Assembly: GCF_021869535.1 (NCBI RefSeq)
Contig: NW_026262701.1
Span: 110,918,001-110,982,000, forward strand
Length of the DNA: 64,000 nucleotides
Source of the DNA: Mytilus californianus
Taxonomy: Eukaryota
Reading direction: 5' to 3'
Of the stretch, positions 2,801-38,100 are shown in pieces. Numbering within the stretch: position 1 is the first letter of the stretch; every line of letters starts with the position of its first letter. Made by a program: the position numbers and the translations under genes. The notes beneath the pieces are model-generated. The model had not been told where the DNA came from. It searched no databases and saw only the letters and a program-made list of their open reading frames with translations.

Positions 2801-3305
2801 ATATATACATCCCTAAAACAAAAATAGACACCAAGTACAGACCTGAGAGTACTCACAGTTACTGACAGCTAGGTCAATGCCAATAACAACTAATAAAAAA
2901 TCGTGTATCTAAGACTAAAGCAAGAATGTTTCAAGCTTTTCCTTGTTTAAGAAACCTCTTAATGGTGACTTTCTAAATTCGTATGCGCTTTTTTGAATCA
3001 GGGTTTCGACATGCTTATATAACGTTTTGCCAGCTTTGAAATTAAGCTAGTAATCTAAAATATCACTTGTTCAAGTCACATTTGTCTGACAGATCTCAAT
3101 GTGATTGTGGTGATGCAGTGAAGTACAGTTTCCACTCCTTTTGTACGAGACTGGCGTACAAAATCATAAACCTTGTATCAATGATGAGTTTATCAACAAT
3201 CCCTGGGTCGATTCCAGTGCTGGTGGAGGATTTCTCCCCGAGGGCATCACCTGCCCAGTAGTCAGCACTTCATGCTTTATTTTGCCTTTTTAACGTTTTT
3301 GATTC

Positions 3306-22800: not shown

Positions 22801-25800
22801 CAGACAATGAGAACAAGATGGGAACCAGAATAGAAAAGTAACACGAGTTATCTCGCCTTGAAATGTCCGTAATTCTTGTACATTAGGAAAAAGAACCGTG
22901 AAAGTAAAAAGTAAAATCGAGACACACTGGTCCACAAGACATAACAGAGAAAAGAGAAGATCGTTTGTGAAAGAGTATAAATGAACAAAAAATTAACATA
23001 ATGTTACAGAAAAAAAATGTTTATATTTTAAAAGAAAGCTGAGCAGCTTCAGTTTGCAGAGAACCAGAGCAATGACCATGTACCATTCCTAACATATTTA
23101 TTGTCGGATCAATCCCTCACCCCAGAAGAAGCTCTGTCAACAGCGACCGATCTTCTAGTCAGCGCAACGGAAACGGTAAGAACTAAAAAAATATTCATAC
23201 TTAATTGACTTTATCACTAAAACATAAGTTGCTTGTTGACTGAAATCGTCCATCTTTATTTATTTGACTTAGTTATAATGCAAAAAAGCTCCTTATTCAT
23301 TGAATAGTAAAATCTGTTTTTTTTTGTTAATTTATTATATAATGAATATGCATGTAAAATAGGAAACCGCCGATGTATTTGTAGTTGAGAGTTGAAGTTG
23401 AAAGATAAACATTGCATGCAAAAGAGAGGCGAAAGATACCAAAGGGACATTCAAACTCATAAGTCGAACATAAACTGACAACGCCATGGCTAAAAAAGAA
23501 AAAGACCAACAGACAAAAAATAGTACACAAAACACAACATAGAAAACTAAAGACTGAGCAACACGAACCGCACCAAAAACTAGGGGTGACAAATAAGTCA
23601 GGATCCTGAACATATTAAATCATAACTAAACGAATAATGATAGTCACGTTACTGGCTTCAATGGAAAGCTGTATGTTTACTTAGGTTTTATGATCCCGAA
23701 CCTTATGCATGTGTTTCCATTGATCATAATATCTGTAATTAATTCACTCCAAGTGTACAAGAATGAGGAGTTTATAATAGGGAAAATATTCAAATTTTGT
23801 CACTGTTTACATTATTTATTAACCATTTTCAATGCAATGCTGTATAACCTCGTGACAAAAACTTTTTTATAAGTGTAACCAAAACAAGGGTGTGAATAAC
23901 TTGGATATATGCAGATCAAACAATATCATGTGTACTATCTTTTGAAGTAAACCCCACATTTCTGTTTATGCATATCTAAGTTGTTAATTAAATGTATATT
24001 TTACCCAGACAACGACCAGCTCTTTGTGGATACTATACAGCTTAGCAAAGAACCCTGAGGTACAGGAAAAGCTTTACAAAGAAACAATGGATCTGATACC
24101 AAATAAAGAACCAATAACACCTGAAATACTAAGTCAACTATCATACCTTAAAGCTGTTGTAAAGGAAACCTTCAGGTGAAATTTATTACTGTTACATCGC
24201 CCCTGTAAACTATAGGTTGCAGAAGGTGCAATGATACTGCATGTCTGCTTGAAATTTCCATCAATAATTTGACTAATGATATGAGAATTAATTACACTTC
24301 TTAAAATTAATCCTATCACCTTATGGAATTTGAAATACTTATGAATTAGGACATTGTTATTGTGACAATTCGTTTCGTAACAAAAAATCAAATTTGTGTT
24401 AAGCACAACATTGCTTTCAAACAAAAGAAGATTTTCCAGAAAACTCCATTGATAAAAATCAACGTCTTGAAATTGTTTTGAAAAAGTGGTTTACGTGAGG
24501 TTTATCGCAAAGAAGTTGGACTAATATTCCCTGAATTTATTTCACACCGGGTCATTTTCAAAAGCCTTTCAATCTTTACTTAAATTCATAGTATCAAAAC
24601 CCAATGTGTGTACTTAAAAGAGAGGCGAAAGATACCAAAGGGACATTCAAACTCATAAGTCTAAAATAAACTGACAAAGCCATGGCTAAAAAAGAAAAAG
24701 ACATTCTAACAAAAGACCCTGTGAGTAAAAACAAATACAGGGGATATTGGTTCTTCCTCTTTTCACATGATGAAATCGCAGTGTAAGTGTGAACAATATT
24801 TACTTTTGTTTTAGATTGTATCCTATAACATTTGCCACAAGCAGACATATAGATGATGACTTGGAAGTCAACCAATACATGATCCCTGCAGGGGTTTGTA
24901 TTTTTTTTAAAGTTTATATAAAATGTTCTTGTTTTTGTCGTTTGTGTAAATAAAGATTACTGAGTATATATCTTCGACTGAGATCGAAGTCCTATCCTCA
25001 AATCGGAGATCGATCTGACGTCACAGTCTTAAATCGAAGTCCAAATATTTCAATACTCTAATTAAAATCTTATTTAACCAGATGTAAGTCATGGTAGCTG
25101 CCTATCGGGTCACTCAAATGTCTTAATATCTGAATACCAGTTAAGTCTATATTTCTGTTCTCTTTAGTGATCTTTTTGTCTTCATATTATTCTTTCTACA
25201 ATAGTCTATATGACAAATAAGATATCGTGATGAGTTGACTTACGAAAATGAACGACAGAGGAGACAACATCTAATTCCAAAAAGAAGCAACTAAAACAAA
25301 ATAAAAGGACGTCACGGATTGCGGGTAGATAACAAGTCATCTACAGACTACATATTATAATATGGACATGGATATTTTGCGTTCAAAATAAAAAACACTT
25401 CAAAGACACCAGACTACAAATTTGGGACGCCAGACACGTGTTTCTTCTACATAAGACTAATCAGTGACGCTCGAATCAAAAGAGTTGGAAGGCCAAAACA
25501 AATACGAAATTGATGAACATTGAAAAACCAATTATTTCGAAAAGTTGTGTCAAATACGTCGAAGCATATATATGCCTGGTGGTATATTAACCTTACTATT
25601 TAGAATATTTCAACATTCTATTTTATTGACAGTTGATTAACAAAAATAACGTACCAATGGTATTTCATGTCGGCACACAAGTGCTGAATCTAGGGCTGGT
25701 GATACCACAAGGAACGAAACGTCCATCACCAGTGACTAAGGCTATATATGACTGGGGGTAGATAAACCTTAGTGTTTAGCATATTTACATTTGAAGTCGT

Positions 25801-28800
25801 TGATCCAGTCTATGTGCATTGTTTCATTCAATTCTTTTTGTTGGTCGTGTAGTCCGAGATTCAGACGTCAGAGCAATTTTGTACTAGAGATCGTGTTGCT
25901 CAGCCTTTAGATTGCTATGGAGTGTTTTGTAGACTGTTGTTTGTATTTACACCAAATTGGTAATTATGACTTCGTCATATTTGTAACAACTGTGACCTAT
26001 ATATGTTACAGTGAATTTGTAAAATCAGGGATTTTGTAAAATCCCTGGAATAATTAGTGATTTTGTAAAACCACAGTTTAAACTTGATATTAGAAATTTG
26101 TTTTTCTTAATATAAAAACAGACTTTGAAATACATAAAACTTTTGTACAGTGATTATGAATTTGGGTGACATCTACTGTTACATAATTGCCCTGCTTTTC
26201 GACAGGCACACCTATTTTGTTCACATCTATTCTTTCCAGAACATCCATATTTTAAAAAACCTTGCCCATCGCAAATGGAGGACAGTTTAACTGCTTGTCG
26301 AAAAGGTATGAAATTGCCAATAGATACATCTGACGGACTCAAAAACAGGGAATCAGTGGGTTCAAACTGGTTTCTTGAGTATGACAATAACAAAATGCCA
26401 TATTTGGTACCAAGACGATAACCTTTCTCTTACTTTCCATGGACAATTGCCATTAAATTGGATCACCCTTTCCACAATCAACAACTGTAATAGGAATAAC
26501 AACATTACATCTAATGCTTACTTCTTCTAAAACTTTATTAGTCAGACGTAACATACGATTGGCTTGTTTTATTATTGATTGAGAAGCAATGACCTGAAAT
26601 TTCAGGGATTTTACAAAATTCCTGATTTAAAAAATTTACTGTAACATATATACCGTGTGCGCGTCTTTTGGAATCAAGCGCGCTAATATTAATATTTTAA
26701 CAACATAATTAATGATTTGGCAAGTATTAAATCAAGATGCAGGAGCCAAAAGCTAGCAAAACATAATATATCAGATAAGATTTTTGGAGGAAAAAAAACC
26801 CCAAAACATCTATTTATTTCCTTTTTTGTTTGCGCTTGTTTAATTAAATCTAAACGATAAAATATGGACAAAGTTTGTTAATATGTTACTTAATCTACCA
26901 AACATTTAAAAGTGCCTTGTTCAGAATTAGAGTTCTCAACAGTCACTACAAGACGTCATTACAGCGTCCAGAAAGAAGACATCGATCAGAGAAGTCAAGA
27001 ATTTGACGTCGATTTGCACCAGAATAAAAGAGGCCATGAACCCATGTTCAAATCTGGTGAAACTATTTAGGATATACAAATCAACATAAAAACAAAACCT
27101 GAGGGAATTTTATCACAAGATCTAAGACAGAGAAAACATGTCGCGTGTCATTTGAGACATAGACACGTCGTATCGGTCAACGATTAGTGATGGTTACCGT
27201 GTTGATTCCAGTCGTTCTTCATCATAACTCTGTGGAAGCAGTTTTATGTGTAATGAGCACACCCCTGTTAATGTATGTCCGTATCATATTGGCATGCACA
27301 CGCGTGGCGTATCAAATAAGATACGTAAACACATATAAAGGGGCAGCGGTCATATTTTACTGCTAAAATTTACTCGAATAATTCAATCCCTCTCCGTGTC
27401 CGATTTTCTTCCATGCGATGCCGCCACCGTAGAGCAGCGGAATATAATGACTATATTATTCGGTTTATGCTGAAATGGGAAATTGATAATGGGAAAGCCG
27501 AAATCGTCACGTTTGTCATGGATACTAGTGTGAAGTAGTCCATACGTGTTGATACTAAGAACATGAACCAGCATTGAAGCAGGCCTTCTAATTTCGGTAA
27601 TATCCTTAATTTCAAGTTAACTGGATAGAGTAGATGCAAGCACTCACTAAAATGTGGATTGGTGAGTGACAGACATCATCATTATATCAAAGAACTTGGA
27701 TGTAACGTATAATAATTAAACCTGGTGAGATAAAATGGAATGACATTTTTGTATCTGTGTATTAAGGGGAGTCGTTGCAGTTTCCCATATAAGAATACTA
27801 GTATTGTCAATTCTTAAATGATTTTGAGATATGCTGTAGATCGAGATTGGTATTTTTGAAACACATGAAATAAAACAGAGGTAATAGTATTTGTTTTCGA
27901 ATAAAGTGAGATTCAAACTTTTGTTATTTCGATGAAATTTAATAAAACAACTTTAAGATTTAAAAAAGAGATATCAGTTTTAGCAATGAAAATAGCGAAC
28001 TTGGTTTATTTAAAAGCTTTTATAATGTGACTAGTATTGTTTCATTGCATTACGTGTTTGAATTTTTGTTTTTCTTACCAAAATAAGATAAAGCCGACCT
28101 TTATTTAGAAGTTTGACAAATGCATTATGCGTTATGTTCTTGAAAATGTGTTTCATGCACCGGAATTGTCACATTATATTTTGCGGGAAAATCATTTTTC
28201 AACGTTCGGAAAAAAAGTGCATACATCAAAGAAACAAGGGGAGAAATGCATCACTTGTATGTTAACTACTATGGTATAAATCTGATAAACATATTTAAAT
28301 AAGTTTTCGTATTTACTCACTTACAACATTTCGATAGTAAAGTTTCTACGGGGAAAAGAAACGTAAAACCATTTTACAGGAAAATAATTTCGTAACAAAA
28401 GTTTGTGTTGGTTGCATTACAAAGATATATTGTTTTGAGTTCAGGAGAATAAAGGATTTGCTTATTGAAGTTAGTTTTCGAGCGTCACCCTTTTAACACC
28501 TAAATTAATTGACTTAGTGGTGTTAATCTTACTGAAATAATTTCAAGAAAAATATCGTTGTATCTTATGTTTTTAATTTCTTTTTCCGTCACTCACGAAC
28601 GTGCATGGGTTTGTTTTAATTTGATTTTTCATCTTCAGTTATATATTTTTTTTTTTTCCTAAATAAAGACGCATGTCCAAGGGAACTTATATGCTATGTA
28701 CCATGATCCAAAACTATATCCAGATCCAGAGAGCTTTAAACCAGAAAGATGGATGGACGGTAAAATGGATAGGAAGCTCAAATCACTGTCAAACTTGGTC

Positions 28801-30780
28801 TGGGGTCATGGAGCAAGAATGTGTATTGGCAAGTATATAAAGTAGATATGTGTGCTTATTTCAATTTTTATTATGCCCCACCTACGATAGTAGAAGGGGC
28901 ATTATGTTTTCTGGTCTGTGCGTCCGTTCGTTCGTCCTTCCGTCTGTCTGTCCCGCTCCAGGTTAAAGTTTTTGGTCAAGGTAGTTTTTGATGAAGTTTA
29001 AGTCCTATCAACTTGAAACTTAGTACACATGTTCTCTATGATATGATCTTTCTAATTTTAATGCCAAATTAAGAGTTTTGACCCCAATTTCACGGTCCAC
29101 TGAACATAGAAAATGATAGTGCGAGTGGGGCATCCGTGTACTATGGACACATTCTTGTTGTATGCTGTTTTTATATTGATATAATAGGTGTTCCATGTCA
29201 GCTGACTTTTCAGTAGATAGGGGGAATTTGTAACTTTTGACTCTCTCTTTGTTTACAATTGAGCAAAGATCAAACTAATTCATCGAATACTAAATGTAGT
29301 CTAGTTTATAATTTCAAGCAGTTTTTCATACTAATATCTAGTCAAGATTGTTGCTTGTAATCTATCTGAACGTAATATTTGTTTATTTTTAGGTAGAAGA
29401 TTCGCAGAACAAGAGATGTATATAATGTTGACCAAGGTATTAGTTATATTTCTGTGGTCATGTTAAGAACTGTAATAAAAAGGGAATAAAAAGAGATGAT
29501 GGTATAAGTCAATGATAACTCATCCAATTTTGTTGATATAACGGAACTATAAGCAACTGTCATATGGCAGGTTTAGCTAGCTATAAAACCAGGTTCAAAC
29601 CACCATTTTATTCGGAAAATGCTTGTACCAAGTTAGGAATATGGCAGTTGTTTTTCACTTGTTCTGTTGATTGATAGCGTTTGATTTTGTTGTCAGTTTT
29701 TATGGACATCCCTTTTGAATTGCCTTCGAATTCGATATTTTTGTTATACTTTTTTATGCAACAACCAAATGACACAAATATCTAAAAGGACATCTACGCT
29801 ATCCATTTCTTGTTCAGTGCATGTAATGATCTTGTGTAATGAATTATCTGGTATCTATCAAATTTCGATATTGCCTTTAGGCATAAGATTTTGATAGATA
29901 GATAGATCGAGCATTAGCAAGAAATTAAATTCCAAAATTTTTCAATATGATCCAGCAATTTCAGTGATAGAATTAGAACTTATCTTGTGTGGAATCTCTT
30001 CAAATAGCAAATCATTAATTAAAGAGTTTTTTTTTTAAATATTTCCTCCCTGTCTTATTAATTCAATTCCAAGTTTGTTGCAGTGGTTTTGGTTTGATTA
30101 CCAGATTCTTGTTCAAAGCTTTCCTCGAACAATTCAACAGCTCCATAAAATAAGCAGTTCCAGCTCGCTTATTTGATACAATGTTGTTCGTTATATTATA
30201 TATTGTATTATACCGCTTCTTTATAATATTCAGTTGAACAGGTTATTTTCTCGAGTATGAGCCGAATCTTCGGATACGGGGCTTGGTTAGGTAGGTACTA
30301 CTGTATTGTTGCAGTTACAGATTGTCTTCAAACATATATATATAAATAAAAAAGATACAAGGTTTATAAATTGTTACGCAGAGGCGTATTTCGTCTACAT
30401 CCGACTCATCAGTTGCTTTAGAATCAAAACAGTTGAAGGGGGCAAATCAAAAACAAAGTTGAAAAGCATTGCAGGCCAAGTTTCAAAAAGAAATTCCAAA
30501 TGCAGCTAAGGCAATCTATGCCTGGGGAAGAAAAGTGTTATATATTATATAAGTTAATGTTTCAGGACCTTTATACACCTATTGAATAGTGGGAATTCGG
30601 ATTTTTCATCATTAATCGAACACTTTTTTTATTTCCATTTTCAGACATTTGACATTTCTATTTCAGATAATTCAAAATTTCAAATTGGAATACCACCATG
30701 AAGATATTGAACCTATCCTGAATACGGTAATGACACCCGACAGACCACTCAGACTGAAATTTATTCCTCGATCGGACTGA
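13899..30780 (+). CDS. CYP10: Mitochondrial-clan cytochrome P450, CYP10-like (534 aa, 11 coding exons)
   Basis: Exons 13899-14018, 16277-16447, 16728-16924, 18757-18947, 19751-19971, 23035-23175, 24009-24175, 24815-24893, 28669-28828, 29393-29436, 30667-30780 sum to 1605 nt, in frame. Motifs: PGPKGLPIVGTLFDYFKKDGP, GEEWHRHR (helix C), SATETT (helix I), KETFR (ExxR), KPERW, heme motif WGHGARMCIG. From memory these closely match Lymnaea CYP10; subfamily assignment needs BLAST/phylogeny. An acceptor-like TTTATAG just before the ATG implies a non-coding first exon upstream. Confidence 0.9.
14230..14480 (+). repeat. Interspersed repeat family 2 (GAGGCGAAAGATACCAAAGGGACATTCAAACTCATAAGTC...)
   Basis: Related copies at about 6230-6320 (-), 23420-23590 (+), 24618-24720 (+). 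Confidence 0.75.
15505..15640 (+). repeat. Interspersed repeat family 3 (TACCAAGTCAGGAATATGACAGTTGTTTTCC...GGTATTTTTGTT)
   Basis: Near-identical copies at about 19470-19600 and 29625-29760, all on + within CYP10 introns. Confidence 0.8.
17645..17900 (+). mobile_element. Degenerate Penelope-like retroelement RT C-terminal fragment
   Basis: Frameshifted translation gives KFGDYVDCIYP..IK.TTD..KSTTYLELHLDI, the IYP-ELEIKDTT-SASYLDL type region; aligns with the 27472-27660 fragment. Confidence 0.55.
25428..25469 (-). ncRNA. Hammerhead ribozyme motif (family A) within a roughly 390-bp retrozyme-like unit (about 25400-25790)
   Basis: Reverse complement: cgtca CTGATTA gtct tatgt agaa GAAA cacgtg TC tggcg. 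Stem I of 5 bp, palindromic stem III CACGTG; G8>T and a broken stem II closing pair. Confidence 0.65.
26004..26646 (-). mobile_element. Internally deleted Ginger2/TDD-type DNA transposon with integrase C-terminal remnant
   Basis: About 45-bp TIRs starting TGTTACAGT / ending ACTGTAACA, TATA on both sides (4-bp TSD). Disrupted coding sequence VDCGKGDP..GYRLGTKYGIL..YSRNQF..GQGFLKYGCSGKNRCEQNRCACRKAGQLCNSRCH, the Cys-rich tail of KRBA2/SCAND3-like (Ginger2) integrases. Confidence 0.75.
27472..27660 (-). mobile_element. Penelope-like retroelement RT C-terminal fragment
   Basis: Translation with one frameshift: NPHFSECLHLLYP..IKDITE..PAS...GLLHTSIHDKRDDFGFPIINFPF; DKRDDFxFxIxNFPF is characteristic of the post-RT region of these elements. 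Confidence 0.7.
28868..29158 (+). mobile_element. Short HINE/pearl-like element
   Basis: T-rich start, subTIRs TATGCCCC / GTGGGGCAT (29125-29133), CGTy/GTCT microsatellite, 3' hairpin GTGT..ACAC; degenerate relatives at about 56016-56330. Confidence 0.75.
30376..30417 (-). ncRNA. Hammerhead ribozyme motif (family A), core intact
   Basis: Reverse complement: agcaa CTGATGA gtc ggatgta gac GAAA tacgcc TC tgcgt. 3-bp stem II intact; stems I and III imperfect. Confidence 0.6.
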
Positions 30781-31710
30781 CATCAATACTCAATACAATG
30801 ATAACAGTGTGTTCAGGAGGAAGAAGTGTATACATGTAGTTTGTCGGATTACGTATGACTCTGTGATATTCTATTTCTGTGATATAATAAACTTCAAACA
30901 TTTCATTTATAACATAGACTGATCTTTTAACAATGTGGTAAAGCTGTTCTCTTGAAAAAATATTTCTGCTCATTTCTTAACTTTTCATGACAAAATTCCG
31001 ATGTTCAAAAAATATTTGAGAATAGTTTACAGTAAAGTACTTCCAGCATTTTTTTTAATATTTCAACTTTAGTAAAAGAGTTAACATGTCTCTTTAGTTA
31101 TGGATAACAATAATACAAATGCATAAGGAAATAAAAGAAGTTAACAGTATTTCAAAAGTATGTTTTATTGTTGGTATCTTTGCACTTTAATTATGTGTTT
31201 CTTCCAATCTGAATGCAGTTATATAATTAGTTCAATGGGAGAAATTGTAATTAATGACAACACTTTATATATATCTCATACAATTAATAATATGATATAA
31301 AAATTAACCAGAACAGACAAATGAATAAAACAGTATACTGTAAAGGGGAAAATAAGGGACAAGAAAAAACGGATATTAGAAATTGCAAAATGTAAACCCT
31401 TGGATAATAATCATTTAACAGTATTCTCTCTTCACCCTTTTTAAAGCAAGGGAATGATAAGCTTTTATGTCATTACTACCACTGGGTCAAAACCTCTGCT
31501 GGTGAACTGTTAGTCCCCGAGGGTATCACCAGCCCAGTAGCCAGTACTTTGGTACTGGCATAAAAATACAGATATTGTGTGATTAAATTTATAAAATTTT
31601 GGAAATCATCTTAAACTAGATATGGACAATCCCCTCCCCCTTTCTGTTCTGCCATATGCATGAGTATAGTTCCACATATTTTAGATTTGACAAACAGTGA
31701 TGTTGGCATA

Positions 31711-32070
31711 CAACTTGAAATTGTTACGCCGTCTGTAAGACACAAATTATGCCCCCGCCTGACCATAGAAAATTATAAATTTAACACTCTGTATGATGAT
31801 GTAACTGTAGGAGGAGATAACCGGACAAACCATGATCTCTTTATGCTAGTAGCAAAAAAATGACCAAGTCCAACTACCTGTCATTTTCAGAATATTTAAA
31901 AAAAATCAAAATCCTGTGGCCATGCACACCTTCATTATGTGTATTAACATCCTACAAAATATTAAAGTTGTACCTCCAAAACTGTAGGAGGAGATAGCCA
32001 GACAAACAATGTATCTTAATCAAGACTCCCCACCCGCCCCCCGCCGACATTTTGTCGCGGGGGCATAATA
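31711..32070 (-). mobile_element. Short HINE-type element
   Basis: Inverted TTATGCCCCCGC (about 31747) / GCGGGGGCATAA (about 32057), A-rich ends. Confidence 0.65.
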
Positions 32071-32208
32071 AAGGAATATATCTCCCTTATGCAAAGCTCT
32101 GATTCCTTGTGACGTCCGAATTAGGCTATGCTTTAAGTCCTTTTTTGGTTTCATCCTCTCTTCAACATATGTATTAGATTTTGGATATTCCAATATATTT
32201 TGGCCTCG

Positions 32209-32253
32209 AGCATCACTGAAGAGACATTATTTGTTGAAATGCGCATCTGAATC
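32209..32253 (+). ncRNA. Near-intact minimal type I hammerhead ribozyme (family B)
   Basis: gcatca CTGAAGA gaca ttatt tgtt GAAA tgcgca TC tga: full core (32216-32222, 32236-32239), 4-bp stem II, palindromic stem III ATGCGCAT, AUC cleavage triplet, 3-bp stem I. Confidence 0.72.
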
Positions 32254-33996
32254 ATCAAAATTGGTACCTTTTATGTTATTAGCTGATAATAAATTAAGAA
32301 AGTTATATTGAACACAAGTGCTGGATTATCATACTGTGGGATTAGGTAGTATTTCTTATGTGGACAAAGTATAAAAATCATGAACAAATATTTGTCTTTT
32401 ATTGTGTGAAATCTCTTTTAACACACAGGAAATAATATATTTTGCACCTAAAATAAAAATAATGCATAATCATAATGTTTCATCAAATAATATTGGAAAT
32501 AAAGTACATATTGATGATTGTAACCAAAAAATCATCTGATTGATAAAATATCACAATATTCAAAGTACTACTGTAAAAAAAGACATCAGAAGATTATGCA
32601 GAGTTATCAATTTGTCCCTCATAATGATGCTTAATCCAGATCTAAGATTTCCAAATATTTTATTTGATCATTCAGTTCTGTAAAAAAAAATCAAAACCCA
32701 ATCTCCATAAAAAAAAACCACAACACTGGTACCTATTTATAGAATAATAAAAATTTGGGGAATGATTTTCCACACAAATATTTAAAGTAATAAAAATAAT
32801 TTCTTCCTGATTAGTTAAAAAAGGTGAAGCTTGAAAAAGTACGACATTAAAAAAAACATTGCATTTTCTGTCTAGTAGCAAAAAAAAATCACATAAAAAA
32901 ATTTCTTACATAACTATTACTCATTCTGTAGAGGTAAAAAATCAAAAATATTTACTCGCTGAACTCTTTCCCATATTTATTTTTTTGCATAATAATTCAG
33001 ATAAACTATCACAAACACATGTGGGAATGTAAAAATTTGTTTCCTCAATCTGCTTGCATCACTTATCTTCAGTTAATGATCCTTTTTAAACTTTATCTTA
33101 TATTGACTAGAATCCTTTAACTCCTACACTTTACAATCATTCAATCTACTAAAATGGTAAACATGAGTGGATGCACTAAAATGTCTCACCAGTTCAACTG
33201 ATTTATGTTAAAGTCGTATTATACAGGTATCATATGGTAAACAAAACATTAATGATCCATGAAAATGAGGTCTTGCCAAGGTGAACCCTCTCAGACAGGT
33301 TGTTCACTTTTCAATGATTCTATTCACCAAAAGTTAGTAGGATTTACATGTACTTTTATTAAGTAAGATTTGCATGAAATCACAGAAACTTAACATTGAA
33401 AAATGGAAAATGAGATCAAGGTTAGATGTATGCAGTCAGACTACACTTTTAATATATCATGTAGTGTAATTGTCATCTAACAAAGAATTCCACTCAAATT
33501 TGTGCTAGGGGTCATCTTGAACTTGAAGTGAGCTTAGAGGTTTTTGCACTATGTTGAAGGCCTCACTGTGACTTTGAGATAAAGAAAATAAGGCAGTCAA
33601 AATGCTGTTATTTACTTTTTGTTTTTTATAAGCATATTGTTATTTTGTGTCTTGAACTGATATGCCTTATCCTTCCTTTTCCACATGTACTTGTTATTCA
33701 TTAATTATGGTGGGCCTATAACTTAGAGAAACTGACCTTTATGCTAAAATGAACCATGAAAATAAGGGTCCTTGTCAAACAGGCATGTTTCTAATTGACA
33801 AAATATATTGGATGTGATACAGAAAATGACTGAAAACATAACCTGTTGACCAATCAACTATGAAAATGAGTTCATGGTGAATTCATATGTATACCTTGGA
33901 ATGATAATGATTCTATATACCAAATTTTGTGGACCTATTCCTCATAACTGAAAAGATCATTTGATAACCATACACATGTAGTCAATGCACTATAAT

Positions 33997-35164: not shown

Positions 35165-38100
35165 TTAGAGATCACAGTGTACTATTGTCCAGAACATCAA
35201 CCATGTTGGCAAAACTGTAAAACAAAATAAGCCATACATCCATGACCCAAACAAATATCTGTCTAAGATTGTCAAAACTAGGCCATGTTTCATGCTCTCA
35301 AAGGACTTCTGTATTAAATCCCATGATCCTTTGTAACGTCCTTCCATTGTTGAGATCATTGATGCTATACAAATTTGAACTGCAGGACACAGGAGTAGAA
35401 GTAAAATCTTTTGTAGCCAACAAAATATTCTGAAACAAGATGTAACATATATATATATATATATAAAATACAATTTTCCAAGATATTTTATAATTGCATG
35501 ACAAATACTGGAGTTTTTTCAATGATTATTCTGACTGATTTTAACATTTTTTTCAAGATTAATCTACATTTACCTATCAATTCACCAGACCAGTATGGTG
35601 TCGTATCTCTGATCAATTCCATAGGGTGTTGATGTTTGTTCACTGTTGAAGGCCGACTTTTAGATGTCTTATCTGTTTAATGGGTGTTGATGGGTTACTT
35701 TACACATTTTTTTGAAATCTCCTTTTTTCAAATTTGAATTCATCTACTCATTTATCAAAACACATATTCAAACATGTGGAGGGATGACAAAAACAGATTT
35801 TATTGTAGCTAAATTGGGTTTTCCTAAAGTGTATGCAAGTATTTAGCCTTATCACATATCTTATATGTTATGTTAATTTCGGTCAAACTAAAAATGTAAA
35901 CAGTTTGTTTTCTGTAATATGGATTGAATTAGTTTTGTTTTCCATTGGTTTATGTAATAAGAGAAAAAAAACTTACAAATAAATCAGCTTAAATTTAAAA
36001 AGAGACAATTCAATTTCCATATATCATAACAAATGCCCACTCTTTCTTAAAAAATACCTTAAACAGTAGTTTTTGTAAAATCACAATTCAAATCAAATTC
36101 AAAATTTCACTTTGTAAAAGTAAAGAGAATGTTCCAAAATGTAATACTTTTTTCCCAACTTTACAACCCTAACTTTGCAGTCCATGTAATAGGCATTTTC
36201 TGTGCTTTTTCAAGAAGACACTGGAAAAAATTCCCTGTATTGAAATCTACAGCATCAGACATTTTAAAAGTGAAGTTTTATAATTAGCAGTCCTTACCTA
36301 TTTTTACAAGGATGTGTAATAACTGTTACAGGTATTATAAATACTGCTAAGAAGAAGGCTAAAGATATGTTCATCAATGATATAGAAAAAAGTACTAATG
36401 ACTGGAATATCAGGCCTATACTCTTCAGTAGTTCCCAATCAAATATCAACCTCTTATCAGATGACTGGGATTTTCTGAAAAATAATAAATCACTGTCTTC
36501 AAAGGAAAATACATGTGCATTAAACAGAAACAAATTATCTCATCTTATGACTAACAAATATACACAAACATTTTTTTTTCTCAAAACAACATAATGTTTT
36601 TAAAAATCAATCTTTTTAACTATTCAGATTACCTTTAATAGTTTGCTGGCTTGCTTTTTTGAGTTTTTGATTAGTATCAAACTTAGATATTATCTACTTT
36701 TCATATCTTAGCTATGATGGACATTCTAAATACAAAGCATGAAGACAGCACTTAATACATAAAGATAGGTATAACCTAGTTTGACTTTCGAATATTCTTA
36801 TTACAAAAGAAATTATAACTTATTAAGTTTTCCTAAATCTATCTGGATGTGCTTGTAAGAAATTAGTACCCCAACTGATGCCAACTTTCAAGGGTTGTAA
36901 TTCCATGAAAATTATGTCGTTTGAAACACAACTCTATTTGTAACTCAAAATTTATTTCTTATAAACCAAATAAAACACTTTTATTAGCAATTATTACATT
37001 TTCCCTTGGATCCTACTGCCTAATATTTTTTAGATCATGGATAAGACCTGATACTCGAAAATATTAGGCAATGATGTCATGTATCAATGAAACAAGGTCA
37101 AGTATTCATGTCCATCCACATCAATTTATCAAGGAAATGCAGGCAACTTCATTCATTCAACGAACAACTATCACAATATTAGGTACGCAAAGAAATAGTT
37201 TTACTAATTTTTTCATTTATTTCATATTCTCAACCAAAAAAAAACATTGTTATGACAAATTAAAGACGAAATTAATAATGGCATTTTATTTTTTATACTT
37301 ACTTTATCAGCTCAAATAATAGCTTGCCCTAGAGGGCTTCCTTAATATTCTTGCTGATAGTCAGTTTCAAAAAATAAAATGCCATTATTCCATATTTATT
37401 ATTAGTTAAACCAAAAATCAGCTCAATGACTATAGGTATAACTTAGAAGTCCAGACAACTGTGTAATTTAGGAATTGCATTAGGACAGTCATAGGTAATA
37501 CTACTTGCCATGACCGGGTAATAAAAGATTAATGGTGAAGGTCTATATCTTATCTATTTACACAAGTTACTTACTTTGCTACAGTCCTTGGTAATAAAAG
37601 ACAAGCAGAGAACAAAGCCAGCAGTCCAAAGAAGACTGTATCTTCTACCCCAATCCTGAATGATGGAGACATAGTTGTAACAAACTCTGGTCCAGTAAAA
37701 CAGAATACACCCATCAGAAAACTAAATAATATTAAAGGTAATACTGTTGATACTCCTTCTCTAGAGGCTTCCTACAATAATTAAAATGTATTTTTATAAT
37801 AAAAATACAATACAAAAACATCACACACATTTGTATTTATGCATTACCCTAGTAGTTTACACACATACAAATTTCAAGAACTAATGCAATTAACAGCTAT
37901 TTTGTCAAAAATATGTAAATGCAATAAAATATTTCCAGTGTTGCAATAATAAGCTTTATTTGTTCACTTCTTAACTTTATAAACTTTATGGAATAACTGT
38001 TGTGATTGTTGAGAGAAAAGAGTGTCCTGTTTTTACATTAATAATTTTGAGTTGATTATAGTTACTTATATATTTCTGATCCATCATTGTAACTATACAA

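What the first reader, a model, noticed from the sequence alone, without database searches (positions are those of the whole stretch)
32209..32253. Near-intact hammerhead ribozyme in sense orientation 1.4 kb past the CYP10 stop, between convergent CYP10 and GPAA1
Seen: a complete catalytic core (CUGAAGA, GAAA, AUC), a 4-bp stem II, a self-complementary stem III (AUGCGCAU) and a 3-bp stem I. Known: minimal type I hammerheads with palindromic stem III occur in Penelope-like elements and retrozymes and work as dimers. Inference: CYP10 read-through RNA could be cut here, giving a ribozyme-assisted terminator or insulator between the convergent genes. The short stem I and G-U closing pair may make it weak or dead.
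Basis: partly seen in the sequence, partly recalled or inferred. Interest (0 to 1): 0.7.

Follow-up and report, generated by a model that had tools for sequence, protein, structure and literature searches.

The report
Worn hammerhead in a retrozyme copy
The hammerhead self-cutting RNA motif is really there, but it is a mutated, single, interrupted copy of a very common non-coding jumping repeat (a retrozyme), so it is an ordinary passenger and not a purpose-built transcription stop between the two genes.

Summary
Window 32209-32253 (+) has an intact type I hammerhead core (CUGAAGA / GAAA / AUC), a 4-bp stem II closed by G-U, the palindrome AUGCGCAU and a 3-bp stem I. It lies 1,429 nt past a P450 stop (30778-30780) and faces a convergent Gaa1/GPAA1 last exon.

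The motif sits near the 3' end of one copy of a dispersed ~350-bp non-coding repeat, 31461-32283. A younger SINE-like insertion (about 31613-32066) splits that copy.

The same hammerhead type occurs 866 times exactly and 19,968 times with up to 3 mismatches in this 1.65-Gb genome, against 0 for the reversed control. That is about one per 83 kb. It often stands in 348-352-bp tandem arrays, as in published mussel retrozymes.

Intact relatives have a 6-bp stem I and a G10.1-C11.1 pair. The window copy has a CpG-to-TpG change at 11.1 and two stem I mismatches. It is about 10% diverged and scores 16.8 bits on Rfam RF00163, against 33.0 for an intact sister copy.

It is a solo unit, so it cannot release a circular RNA. 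This scan has already reported other retrozyme families elsewhere in this genome.

The parts
31455..31460 (+). Candidate 5' target-site duplication, TGATAA
   Evidence: The same hexamer stands at 32284-32289, directly outside both ends of the repeat copy. It is short and AT-rich, so chance is not excluded.
31461..31475 (+). 15-nt tail of a preceding unit (GCTTTTATGTCATTA); the insertion is about 1.04 head-to-tail units
   Evidence: It matches the unit's 3' end (CCTTTTATGTTATTA, 32267-32281). It shares that end's G-to-T difference from the family majority CGTTTATGTTATTA.
31476..31612 (+). 5' half ('A part') of the ~350-bp retrozyme unit
   Evidence: It is 82-87% identical to many genomic copies (3,294 first-look candidates). 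In other copies it continues directly into the B part.
31613..32066 (+). Nested younger SINE-like repeat that splits the unit (boundaries +/- 6 nt)
   Evidence: It is 88-93% identical to at least 677 candidate copies elsewhere. Those copies start AAACTAGATATGGAC and end GGGGCATAAAAAA. It is absent from uninterrupted copies of the retrozyme unit.
32067..32283 (+). 3' half ('B part') of the retrozyme unit, carrying the hammerhead and a 34-nt tail after the cleavage site
   Evidence: It is 81-88% identical to many copies (1,478 first-look candidates). Those copies share a constant 3' end at 32280/81 and have variable 5' ends.
32202..32268 (+). Full hammerhead including the upper stem I and loop 1
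   Evidence: GGCC (32202-05) pairs with GG..CC (32263-68) in 90% of cells across 37 copies.
32209..32253 (+). Flagged hammerhead core: stem I (degraded), CUGAAGA, stem II with G-U, GAAA, palindromic stem III, C17, cleavage at 32247|32248
   Evidence: RF00163 gives 16.8 bits (E 0.083, model positions 4-42 only) on a 101-nt search. There is no hit at gathering threshold.
32284..32289 (+). Candidate 3' target-site duplication, TGATAA
30667..30780 (+). Context: end of the P450 last exon, with stop codon TGA at 30778-30780
   Evidence: The translation ...IIQNFKLEYHHEDIEPILNTVMTPDRPLRLKFIPRSD* comes. The heme exon is confirmed by Pfam.
35165..35473 (-). Context: convergent Gaa1/GPAA1 last exon, with stop codon TAA at 35165-35167
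   Evidence: PF04114 Gaa1, profile positions 423-497 of 497, E 4.8e-6. Coordinates.

Best explanation
The motif is the hammerhead ribozyme of one old, solo, interrupted copy of a non-autonomous, non-coding retroelement of the animal 'non-LTR retrozyme' class. The unit is about 350 bp, the GC content 34-38%, and the genome is evidently a mussel's.

In active family members, tandem units are transcribed and each type I hammerhead cuts after C17. The resulting ~350-nt monomers are thought to be circularised by a tRNA ligase and copied back into DNA by Penelope-like-element enzymes. These last steps are inferred from the literature and were not shown here.

This copy landed between the P450 and Gaa1 genes as about 1.04 units. 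It then drifted about 10% from the family majority and lost C11.1 by CpG deamination. It also lost two stem I pairs and was split by a SINE-like insertion.

With one weakened hammerhead and no second cleavage site, it cannot release a monomer. At best it nicks read-through RNA inefficiently. It is a passenger, not a device serving the neighbouring genes.
For: Repeat membership:
- The B part matches 1,478 first-look candidates and the A part 3,294.
- A and B are contiguous in other copies.

Tandem arrays with a 348-352-bp period, each unit with a hammerhead:
- L022 has hammerheads at 980, 1332, 1809 and 2160.
- G000:C2 has them at 35225361, 35225711 and 35226059.

Copy number and copy structure:
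- The exact core occurs 866 times and 19,968 times with up to 3 mismatches, against 0 for the control.
- Copies share a constant 3' end and have variable 5' ends.
- No RT or endonuclease ORF lies beside 30 sampled copies. The one exception is a weak RVT_1 hit downstream of L019.

The hammerhead fold is genuine across related types:
- 6 pairs show compensatory double changes and 97.6% of cells are paired.
- The only two unpaired cells belong to the window copy.
- Intact relatives score 29-33 bits on Rfam RF00163.

Decay of this copy:
- U11.1 is the minority state, 53 copies against 866, and the site is a CpG in the family majority.
- Stem I is degraded.
- RF00163 gives 16.8 bits here against 33.0 for the sister copy L015.
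- The hammerhead fold is about 10-13 kcal/mol less favourable than in intact copies: +8.1 against -0.2 to -4.9.
- Divergence from the family majority is 9-11%, and 4 of 10 majority CpGs read TpG or CpA.
- A nested insertion splits the unit.
- This is the only hammerhead of its kind found in the window.

Literature:
- Mussel genomes carry about 5,000 type I hammerheads in 350-390-bp repeats expressed as circRNAs (PMC7229834).
- Retrozymes are considered non-autonomous derivatives or parasites of Penelope-like elements (PMC8557442; bioRxiv 10.64898/2026.07.22.740005).
Against: - No RNA data could be obtained. Neither transcription across the site nor lack of cleavage is shown.
- All invariant core nucleotides are intact and the upper stem I is preserved. 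A G-U pair at 10.1/11.1 may be tolerated, so residual activity cannot be excluded.
- The autonomous partner was not identified. The sampled Penelope-like elements carry a different hammerhead.
- Within the family there is no covariation; the copies are simply similar.
- That the genome is a mussel's rests on a match in kind to the published retrozyme consensus and on other agents' notes, not on a taxonomic test.
- The 6-bp target-site duplication could be chance.
Confidence: 0.9

Rival explanations
1. Exapted ribozyme terminator or insulator. P450 read-through transcripts are cut at 32247|32248, alone or as a dimer through the palindromic stem III. This would limit transcriptional interference with the convergent Gaa1 gene.
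For: - The motif is in sense orientation 1.43 kb past the P450 stop, between convergent genes.
- The core and the stem III palindrome are intact.
- The palindrome is identical to that of thousands of family RNAs, which could in principle pair with it in trans.
Against: - The same element occurs about once per 83 kb, so its presence here needs no explanation.
- The copy shows unconstrained decay in exactly the helices needed for activity.
- Its unit was split by a later insertion.
- Six poly(A) hexamers precede it.
- From general knowledge, not tested here: hammerhead cleavage leaves a 5'-OH, a poor substrate for the 5'-monophosphate-dependent torpedo exonuclease, so cleavage alone is not expected to terminate Pol II.
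Confidence: 0.03
2. Remnant of the pseudo-LTR of an autonomous Penelope-like element, rather than a copy of a non-autonomous retrozyme.
For: - Penelope-like elements are abundant in this genome: at least 1,480 GIY-YIG candidates, with ORFs of 755 and 911 aa.
- They carry hammerheads in their 3' regions (PMC4209133, PMC8557442).
- The partial-tandem structure and the 30-40-nt tail after the ribozyme resemble Penelope-like-element insertions.
Against: - No RT or GIY-YIG ORF lies next to the window copy.
- None lies next to 30 sampled family copies either, apart from one weak RVT_1 hit downstream of L019.
- The sampled Penelope-like elements carry a different hammerhead and share no other similarity with the unit.
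- The family forms multi-unit 350-bp arrays with no coding body.
Confidence: 0.05
3. Chance resemblance to a hammerhead in AT-rich intergenic DNA.
For: A descriptor loose enough to accept this copy hits 11% of shuffled windows. Rfam gives no hit at gathering threshold.
Against: The motif is homologous, base by base, to thousands of copies whose intact members are canonical hammerheads. The reversed control finds 0.
Confidence: 0.01

Closest known systems
Metazoan non-LTR retrozymes of the mussel Mytilus galloprovincialis (Cervera & de la Pena 2020, PMC7229834)
   Same: - Low-GC, non-coding repeats of about 350-390 bp, often in tandem.
- Each unit has a type I hammerhead with a 2-bp/palindromic stem III (A-N-GCGC-N-U), stem I with an internal loop 1, and thousands of copies.
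- The published consensus hammerhead (GAGCGUCA CUGAUGA GUCU..AGAC GAAAC GCGC GUC) aligns position by position with this family's hammerhead.
- A decayed copy of the published type is also in this window.
   Different: - This family's hammerhead has N7 = A and differs by compensatory changes in stem I (A-U for G-C), stem II (A-U for U-A, twice) and stem III (U-A for C-G). It is therefore a distinct ribozyme lineage, not obviously the published HHR A or HHR B.
- The window copy is a single, interrupted, mutated unit, not an array. Expression as circRNA is untested.
Minimal hammerheads of Penelope-like elements (Cervera & de la Pena 2014, PMC4209133; PMC8557442)
   Same: Type I topology, a very short palindromic stem III suggesting action as dimers, location near the 3' end of a retroelement, and partial-tandem insertions with a short tail.
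   Different: - No RT/GIY-YIG ORF is attached.
- The Penelope-like elements sampled here carry another hammerhead (CCUGAUGACGGUGCC...GGCACCGAAAC).
- This family has a longer stem I with loop 1.
Rfam RF00163 Hammerhead_1
   Same: Intact family copies align over the full model (1-45) at 29-33 bits with E down to 4e-7.
   Different: All stay just under the gathering score of 34. The window copy reaches only 16.8 bits over model positions 4-42.

Membership tests
Hammerhead ribozyme, type I | Conserved core C3-U4-G5-A6-N7-G8-A9, G12-A13-A14, A15.1-U16.1, H17 (not G) | tested here: met
   CUGAAGA at 32216-22, GAAA at 32241-44, U16.1 at 32246, C17 at 32247.
Hammerhead ribozyme, type I | Helix II closed by a G10.1-C11.1 pair | tested here: not met
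   The window copy has G-U (C11.1 to U at a CpG). The family has G-C in 866 exact copies against 53 with U.
Hammerhead ribozyme, type I | Open helix I of sufficient length, flanking the cleavage site | tested here: inconclusive
   Three contiguous pairs, then two mismatches, one pair, loop 1 and a 4-bp upper stem. The family has 6 contiguous pairs.
Hammerhead ribozyme, type I | Score at or above the Rfam RF00163 gathering threshold (34 bits) | tested here: not met
   The window copy scores 16.8 bits. Intact relatives score 28.8-33.4 bits, also just below.
Hammerhead ribozyme, type I | Site-specific self-cleavage after H17 | not testable with these tools
   Needs in vitro transcription or 5'-OH RNA-end mapping.
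Metazoan non-LTR retrozyme (family level) | Tandem head-to-tail repeats of 150-450 bp, each with a type I hammerhead | tested here: met
   Periods of 348-352 bp in several arrays.
Metazoan non-LTR retrozyme (family level) | Non-coding, low GC, no LTR/PBS/PPT, high copy number | tested here: met
   GC 34-38%. No ORFs in or beside the units. About 20,000 hammerhead copies. PBS and PPT were not searched for explicitly.
Metazoan non-LTR retrozyme (family level) | Expressed as linear and circular RNA monomers | not testable with these tools
   No RNA data were available. The published evidence concerns a related mussel family (PMC7229834).
Metazoan non-LTR retrozyme (this copy as a working unit) | Two hammerheads flanking a monomer, so that it can be excised | tested here: not met
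   There is a single unit with one hammerhead. No second copy lies in the window.
Penelope-like element pseudo-LTR | Adjacent RT plus GIY-YIG ORF belonging to the same element | tested here: not met
   There is no such ORF near the window copy. None lies by 30 sampled family copies except one weak downstream RVT_1 hit. There is no similarity to sampled Penelope-like elements beyond the ribozyme.

The most novel reading that the evidence does not exclude
The weakened solo hammerhead might still cut P450 read-through RNA when its unchanged palindromic stem III (AUGCGCAU) pairs in trans with abundant retrozyme RNAs of the same family. Dispersed dead retrozyme copies would then act as trans-activated RNA cleavage sites that trim read-through between convergent genes.
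Probability: 0.02. Interest if true: 0.75.

Novelty: new member of a known kind. Interest (0 to 1): 0.15.

Why it matters
As a gene-regulatory device it does not matter: it is a decayed transposon copy. Two modest points remain.

First, the family it belongs to is a very abundant retrozyme lineage, with about 20,000 hammerhead copies and 350-bp units. Its ribozyme differs from the published mussel consensus by compensatory changes in all three helices. It keeps the stem III palindrome, including an AUCCGGAU variant in a sister repeat, which supports dimeric action.

Second, it illustrates that isolated hammerheads near gene ends in this genome should be checked for repeat membership before a function is proposed. 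At one copy per ~83 kb, nearly every 64-kb window will hold one.

Tried and rejected
- Rfam at gathering threshold on the whole window gave nothing. Rfam at E<=10 on 1.1 kb gave only noise. The hammerhead appeared only on a 101-nt stretch. The speed filters also lost an intact sister copy in a multi-locus search, so a blank from Rfam here is weak evidence.
There is no RNA evidence either way.
- Within-family covariation gave none: 0 double changes and shuffles equal to the observed value. The copies are too alike, so I used a cross-type comparison instead.
- Nearest-neighbour probabilities of the hammerhead fold are tiny even for intact copies. They are not informative in absolute terms, so only the relative energies were used.
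- The search for an autonomous partner used GIY-YIG loci. The sampled Penelope-like elements carry another hammerhead. The two loci with a near-identical hammerhead (L068, L043) turned out to hold a different non-coding repeat next to Penelope-like-element fragments.
- The published supplement was searched for this family's hammerhead string and it was not found.
- The search of earlier findings by sequence was blank; per the operators this means nothing.
- I did not test whether the P450 is CYP10. I built and printed no full-length consensus of the element.

Full report
**What is at the coordinates**

Window 32209-32253 (+) reads AGCAUCA-CUGAAGA-GACA-UUAUU-UGUU-GAAA-U-GCGC-A-U-C|UGAAUC. In hammerhead numbering:
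- C3-A9 is CUGAAGA.
- Stem II is G10.1-A-C-A / U-G-U-U11.1, four pairs whose closing pair is a G-U wobble.
- G12-A14 and A15.1 are GAAA.
- Stem III is A15.1-U16.1 and U-A around GCGC, which together form the 8-nt palindrome AUGCGCAU.
- H17 is C at 32247, so cleavage would fall at 32247|32248.
- Stem I is only U1.1-A2.1, G-C and A-U, followed by A-A and U-C mismatches.

The gene context also holds:
- A P450 heme-binding exon lies at 28696-28845 (PF00067, E 4e-12).
- A Gaa1 last exon lies on the minus strand at 35165-35473 (PF04114).
- The P450 reading frame ends ...KFIPRSD* with TGA at 30778-30780, 1,429 nt before the motif.
- I did not test whether the P450 is CYP10.

**Is it more than chance?**

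Taken alone, only weakly. A descriptor loose enough to accept this copy (stem I >= 3, stem II >= 3, stem III >= 2) finds exactly one site on both strands of the window. It finds a mean of 0.11 in 300 dinucleotide-preserving shuffles, and 11% of shuffles have at least one.

Rfam gives no match at gathering threshold and none at E <= 10 on a 1.1-kb stretch. On a 101-nt stretch, RF00163 Hammerhead_1 matches at 16.8 bits (E 0.083), covering only model positions 4-42.

**What makes it real: it belongs to a repeat**

A BLAST of 32100-32400 against the window's own genome (1.65 Gb) returns many copies at 81-88% identity, all covering about 32100-32281, from 1,478 first-look candidates. Extending the comparison shows that 31464-31618 ('A') and 32067-32281 ('B') are two halves of one unit. 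In other copies these halves are contiguous and repeated head to tail:
- L010 and L014 show the tandem arrangement.
- L022 has A/B/A/B... with hammerheads at 980, 1332, 1809 and 2160.

The A part alone has 3,294 first-look candidates.

The family's hammerhead core, written as a 32-nt pattern with the stem II loop free, occurs 866 times exactly. With up to 3 mismatches it occurs 19,968 times. The reversed control finds 0 in both searches. Several exact hits lie 348-352 bp apart, for example G000:C2 35225361 / 35225711 / 35226059.

Further family properties:
- The unit has 34-38% GC.
- Copies share a constant 3' end (...TATGTTATTA, 34 nt after the cleavage site) and have variable 5' ends.
- In 95 kb around 30 sampled copies there is no reverse transcriptase or endonuclease ORF. 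The one exception is a weak RVT_1 hit downstream of L019.

This is the anatomy of the metazoan non-LTR retrozymes described by Cervera and de la Pena. They report about 5,000 type I hammerheads in 350-390-bp repeats in Mytilus galloprovincialis, expressed as abundant circular RNAs (PMC7229834).

**The ribozyme is genuine at family level**

Intact copies read GCAUCA-CUGAAGA-G-ACA...UGU-C-GAAA-U-GCGC-A-U-C|UGGUGC. Stem I is six contiguous pairs, 10.1-11.1 is G-C, and an upper stem I (GGCC with GG..CC) follows an internal loop 1. They align to the full RF00163 model at 28.8-33.0 bits, with E down to 3.7e-7, just under the gathering score of 34.

Within the family there is no covariation, because the copies are simply alike. 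Comparison with related types does show it. The other types are:
- the published-type mussel hammerhead, with an intact genomic example at L064:748-791 (33.4 bits) whose sequence agrees with the consensus in the paper's supplement;
- a variant found in a different ~425-bp repeat (L068, L043).

Across these types 97.6% of cells pair and six pairs carry compensatory double changes: two in stem I, two in stem II, one in stem III and one in the inner palindrome (GCGC to CCGG). In the shuffle control, no shuffle reached the observed paired fraction or covariation score, and 1 of 500 reached six double-change pairs.

The palindrome being kept through a double change favours the view that stem III is completed between two ribozymes. 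The only two unpaired cells in that comparison belong to the window copy.

**State of the window copy**

It is a worn, solo unit.
1. U11.1 is the minority state, 53 copies against 866 with C. It is spread over several subfamily backgrounds and lies at a CpG of the family majority, so it looks like ordinary deamination.
2. The stem I 3' strand is UGAAUC instead of UGGUGC, which removes two pairs.
3. The sister copy L015 has the same stem II loop and scores 33.0 bits on RF00163 under identical search conditions, against 16.8 bits for the window copy.
4. The hammerhead fold evaluates at +8.1 kcal/mol for the window copy against -0.2 to -4.9 for intact copies. The absolute values are unreliable for three-way junctions, so only the difference is meaningful.
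5. The copy is 9-11% diverged from the majority of sampled copies, and 4 of 10 majority CpGs read TpG or CpA.
6. The unit is split at about 31613-32066 by a copy of another dispersed, SINE-like repeat. That repeat has at least 677 candidates at 88-93% identity, and its other copies start AAACTAGATATGGAC and end GGGGCATAAAAAA. It is absent from uninterrupted units.
7. The insertion spans 31461-32283, about 1.04 units. Its first 15 nt repeat the unit's tail and share that tail's private G-to-T change. It is flanked by a candidate 6-bp duplication, TGATAA.
8. No second hammerhead of this family lies in the window, so no monomer can be excised.

**Mechanism**

Shown here: repeat membership, tandem organisation of relatives, a hammerhead fold supported by compensatory changes, and decay of this copy.

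Inferred from the literature:
- transcription of arrays, self-cleavage after C17 and circularisation by a tRNA ligase (PMC7229834);
- reverse transcription by Penelope-like-element enzymes (PMC8557442; bioRxiv 10.64898/2026.07.22.740005).

Penelope-like elements are plentiful in this genome, with at least 1,480 GIY-YIG candidates and ORFs of 755 and 911 aa. The ones I sampled carry a different minimal hammerhead, so the helper of this family is not identified.

**The terminator/insulator idea**

Nothing singles this copy out.
- At about 20,000 copies in 1.65 Gb, one is expected every 83 kb, or about 0.8 per 64-kb window.
- Sense orientation has even odds.
- The helices needed for activity have drifted freely.
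- Three canonical poly(A) hexamers lie between the stop codon and the repeat, and three more lie inside it before the motif.
- From general knowledge, not tested here: hammerhead cleavage leaves a 5'-hydroxyl, a poor entry point for the 5'-monophosphate-dependent exonuclease that drives Pol II termination.

Residual cleavage therefore cannot be excluded, but I put a biological role at about 3%.

**Relation to earlier notes of this scan**

Other agents have already described retrozyme arrays (539-544-bp and 750-bp units, and a 350-nt unit) and Penelope-like elements elsewhere in this genome, and call it a mussel genome. I did not test the species assignment. One note pointed to another hammerhead-bearing repeat at 25400-25790 of this window. 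I confirmed a decayed copy of the published mussel hammerhead type there on the minus strand.

**Verdict**

It is a decayed member of a known class, belonging to a ribozyme lineage that differs from the published mussel consensus. Interest is low.

Noticed in passing
window 25400-25470, minus strand: A decayed copy of the published mussel retrozyme hammerhead type lies inside a P450 intron. It reads GAGCGUCA-CUGAUUAG-UCU..AGA-AGAAAC-ACGUGUC, with core positions G8 and C11.1 mutated. It is a second, different retrozyme family in the same window.
   Followed up: partly
window 31613-32066: A SINE-like repeat is nested in the retrozyme unit. It has at least 677 candidates at 88-93% identity. It contains two direct copies of ACTGTAGGAGGAGATA..GACAAAC and an internal ~180-bp segment that forms tandem arrays at other loci. 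Other copies carry a (GGACG)n-like stretch that is missing here and end in a short A run.
   Followed up: partly
L068:2413-2837 and L043:106-527 (minus): A different ~425-bp repeat starts with a near-identical hammerhead whose stem III palindrome is AUCCGGAU instead of AUGCGCAU and whose H17 is A. It lies next to Penelope-like-element fragments. It may belong to one of the larger retrozyme families reported by other agents.
   Followed up: partly
G000:C110:55838761-55861102 (L044, L056-L059): A Penelope-like element with a 755-aa ORF stands in a head-to-tail array with a 3,927-bp period. Its own minimal hammerhead (CCUGAUGACGGUGCC CUA GGCACCGAAAC AUGU) lies about 870 nt 3' of the GIY-YIG match.
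   Followed up: no
L022:1430-1473: An extra hammerhead (RF00163, 28.8 bits) lies between two regular units, which makes one 477-bp period in an otherwise 351-352-bp array. It appears to be a partial unit duplication.
   Followed up: no
window 3203-3270: A weak match (78% over 68 nt) to the A part of the retrozyme unit, probably an old fragment of the same or a related repeat.
   Followed up: no
L030:370-819: An ORF with a DAN domain (PF03045, E 3e-7) lies beside a retrozyme copy. It is probably an exon of an unrelated host gene.
   Followed up: no
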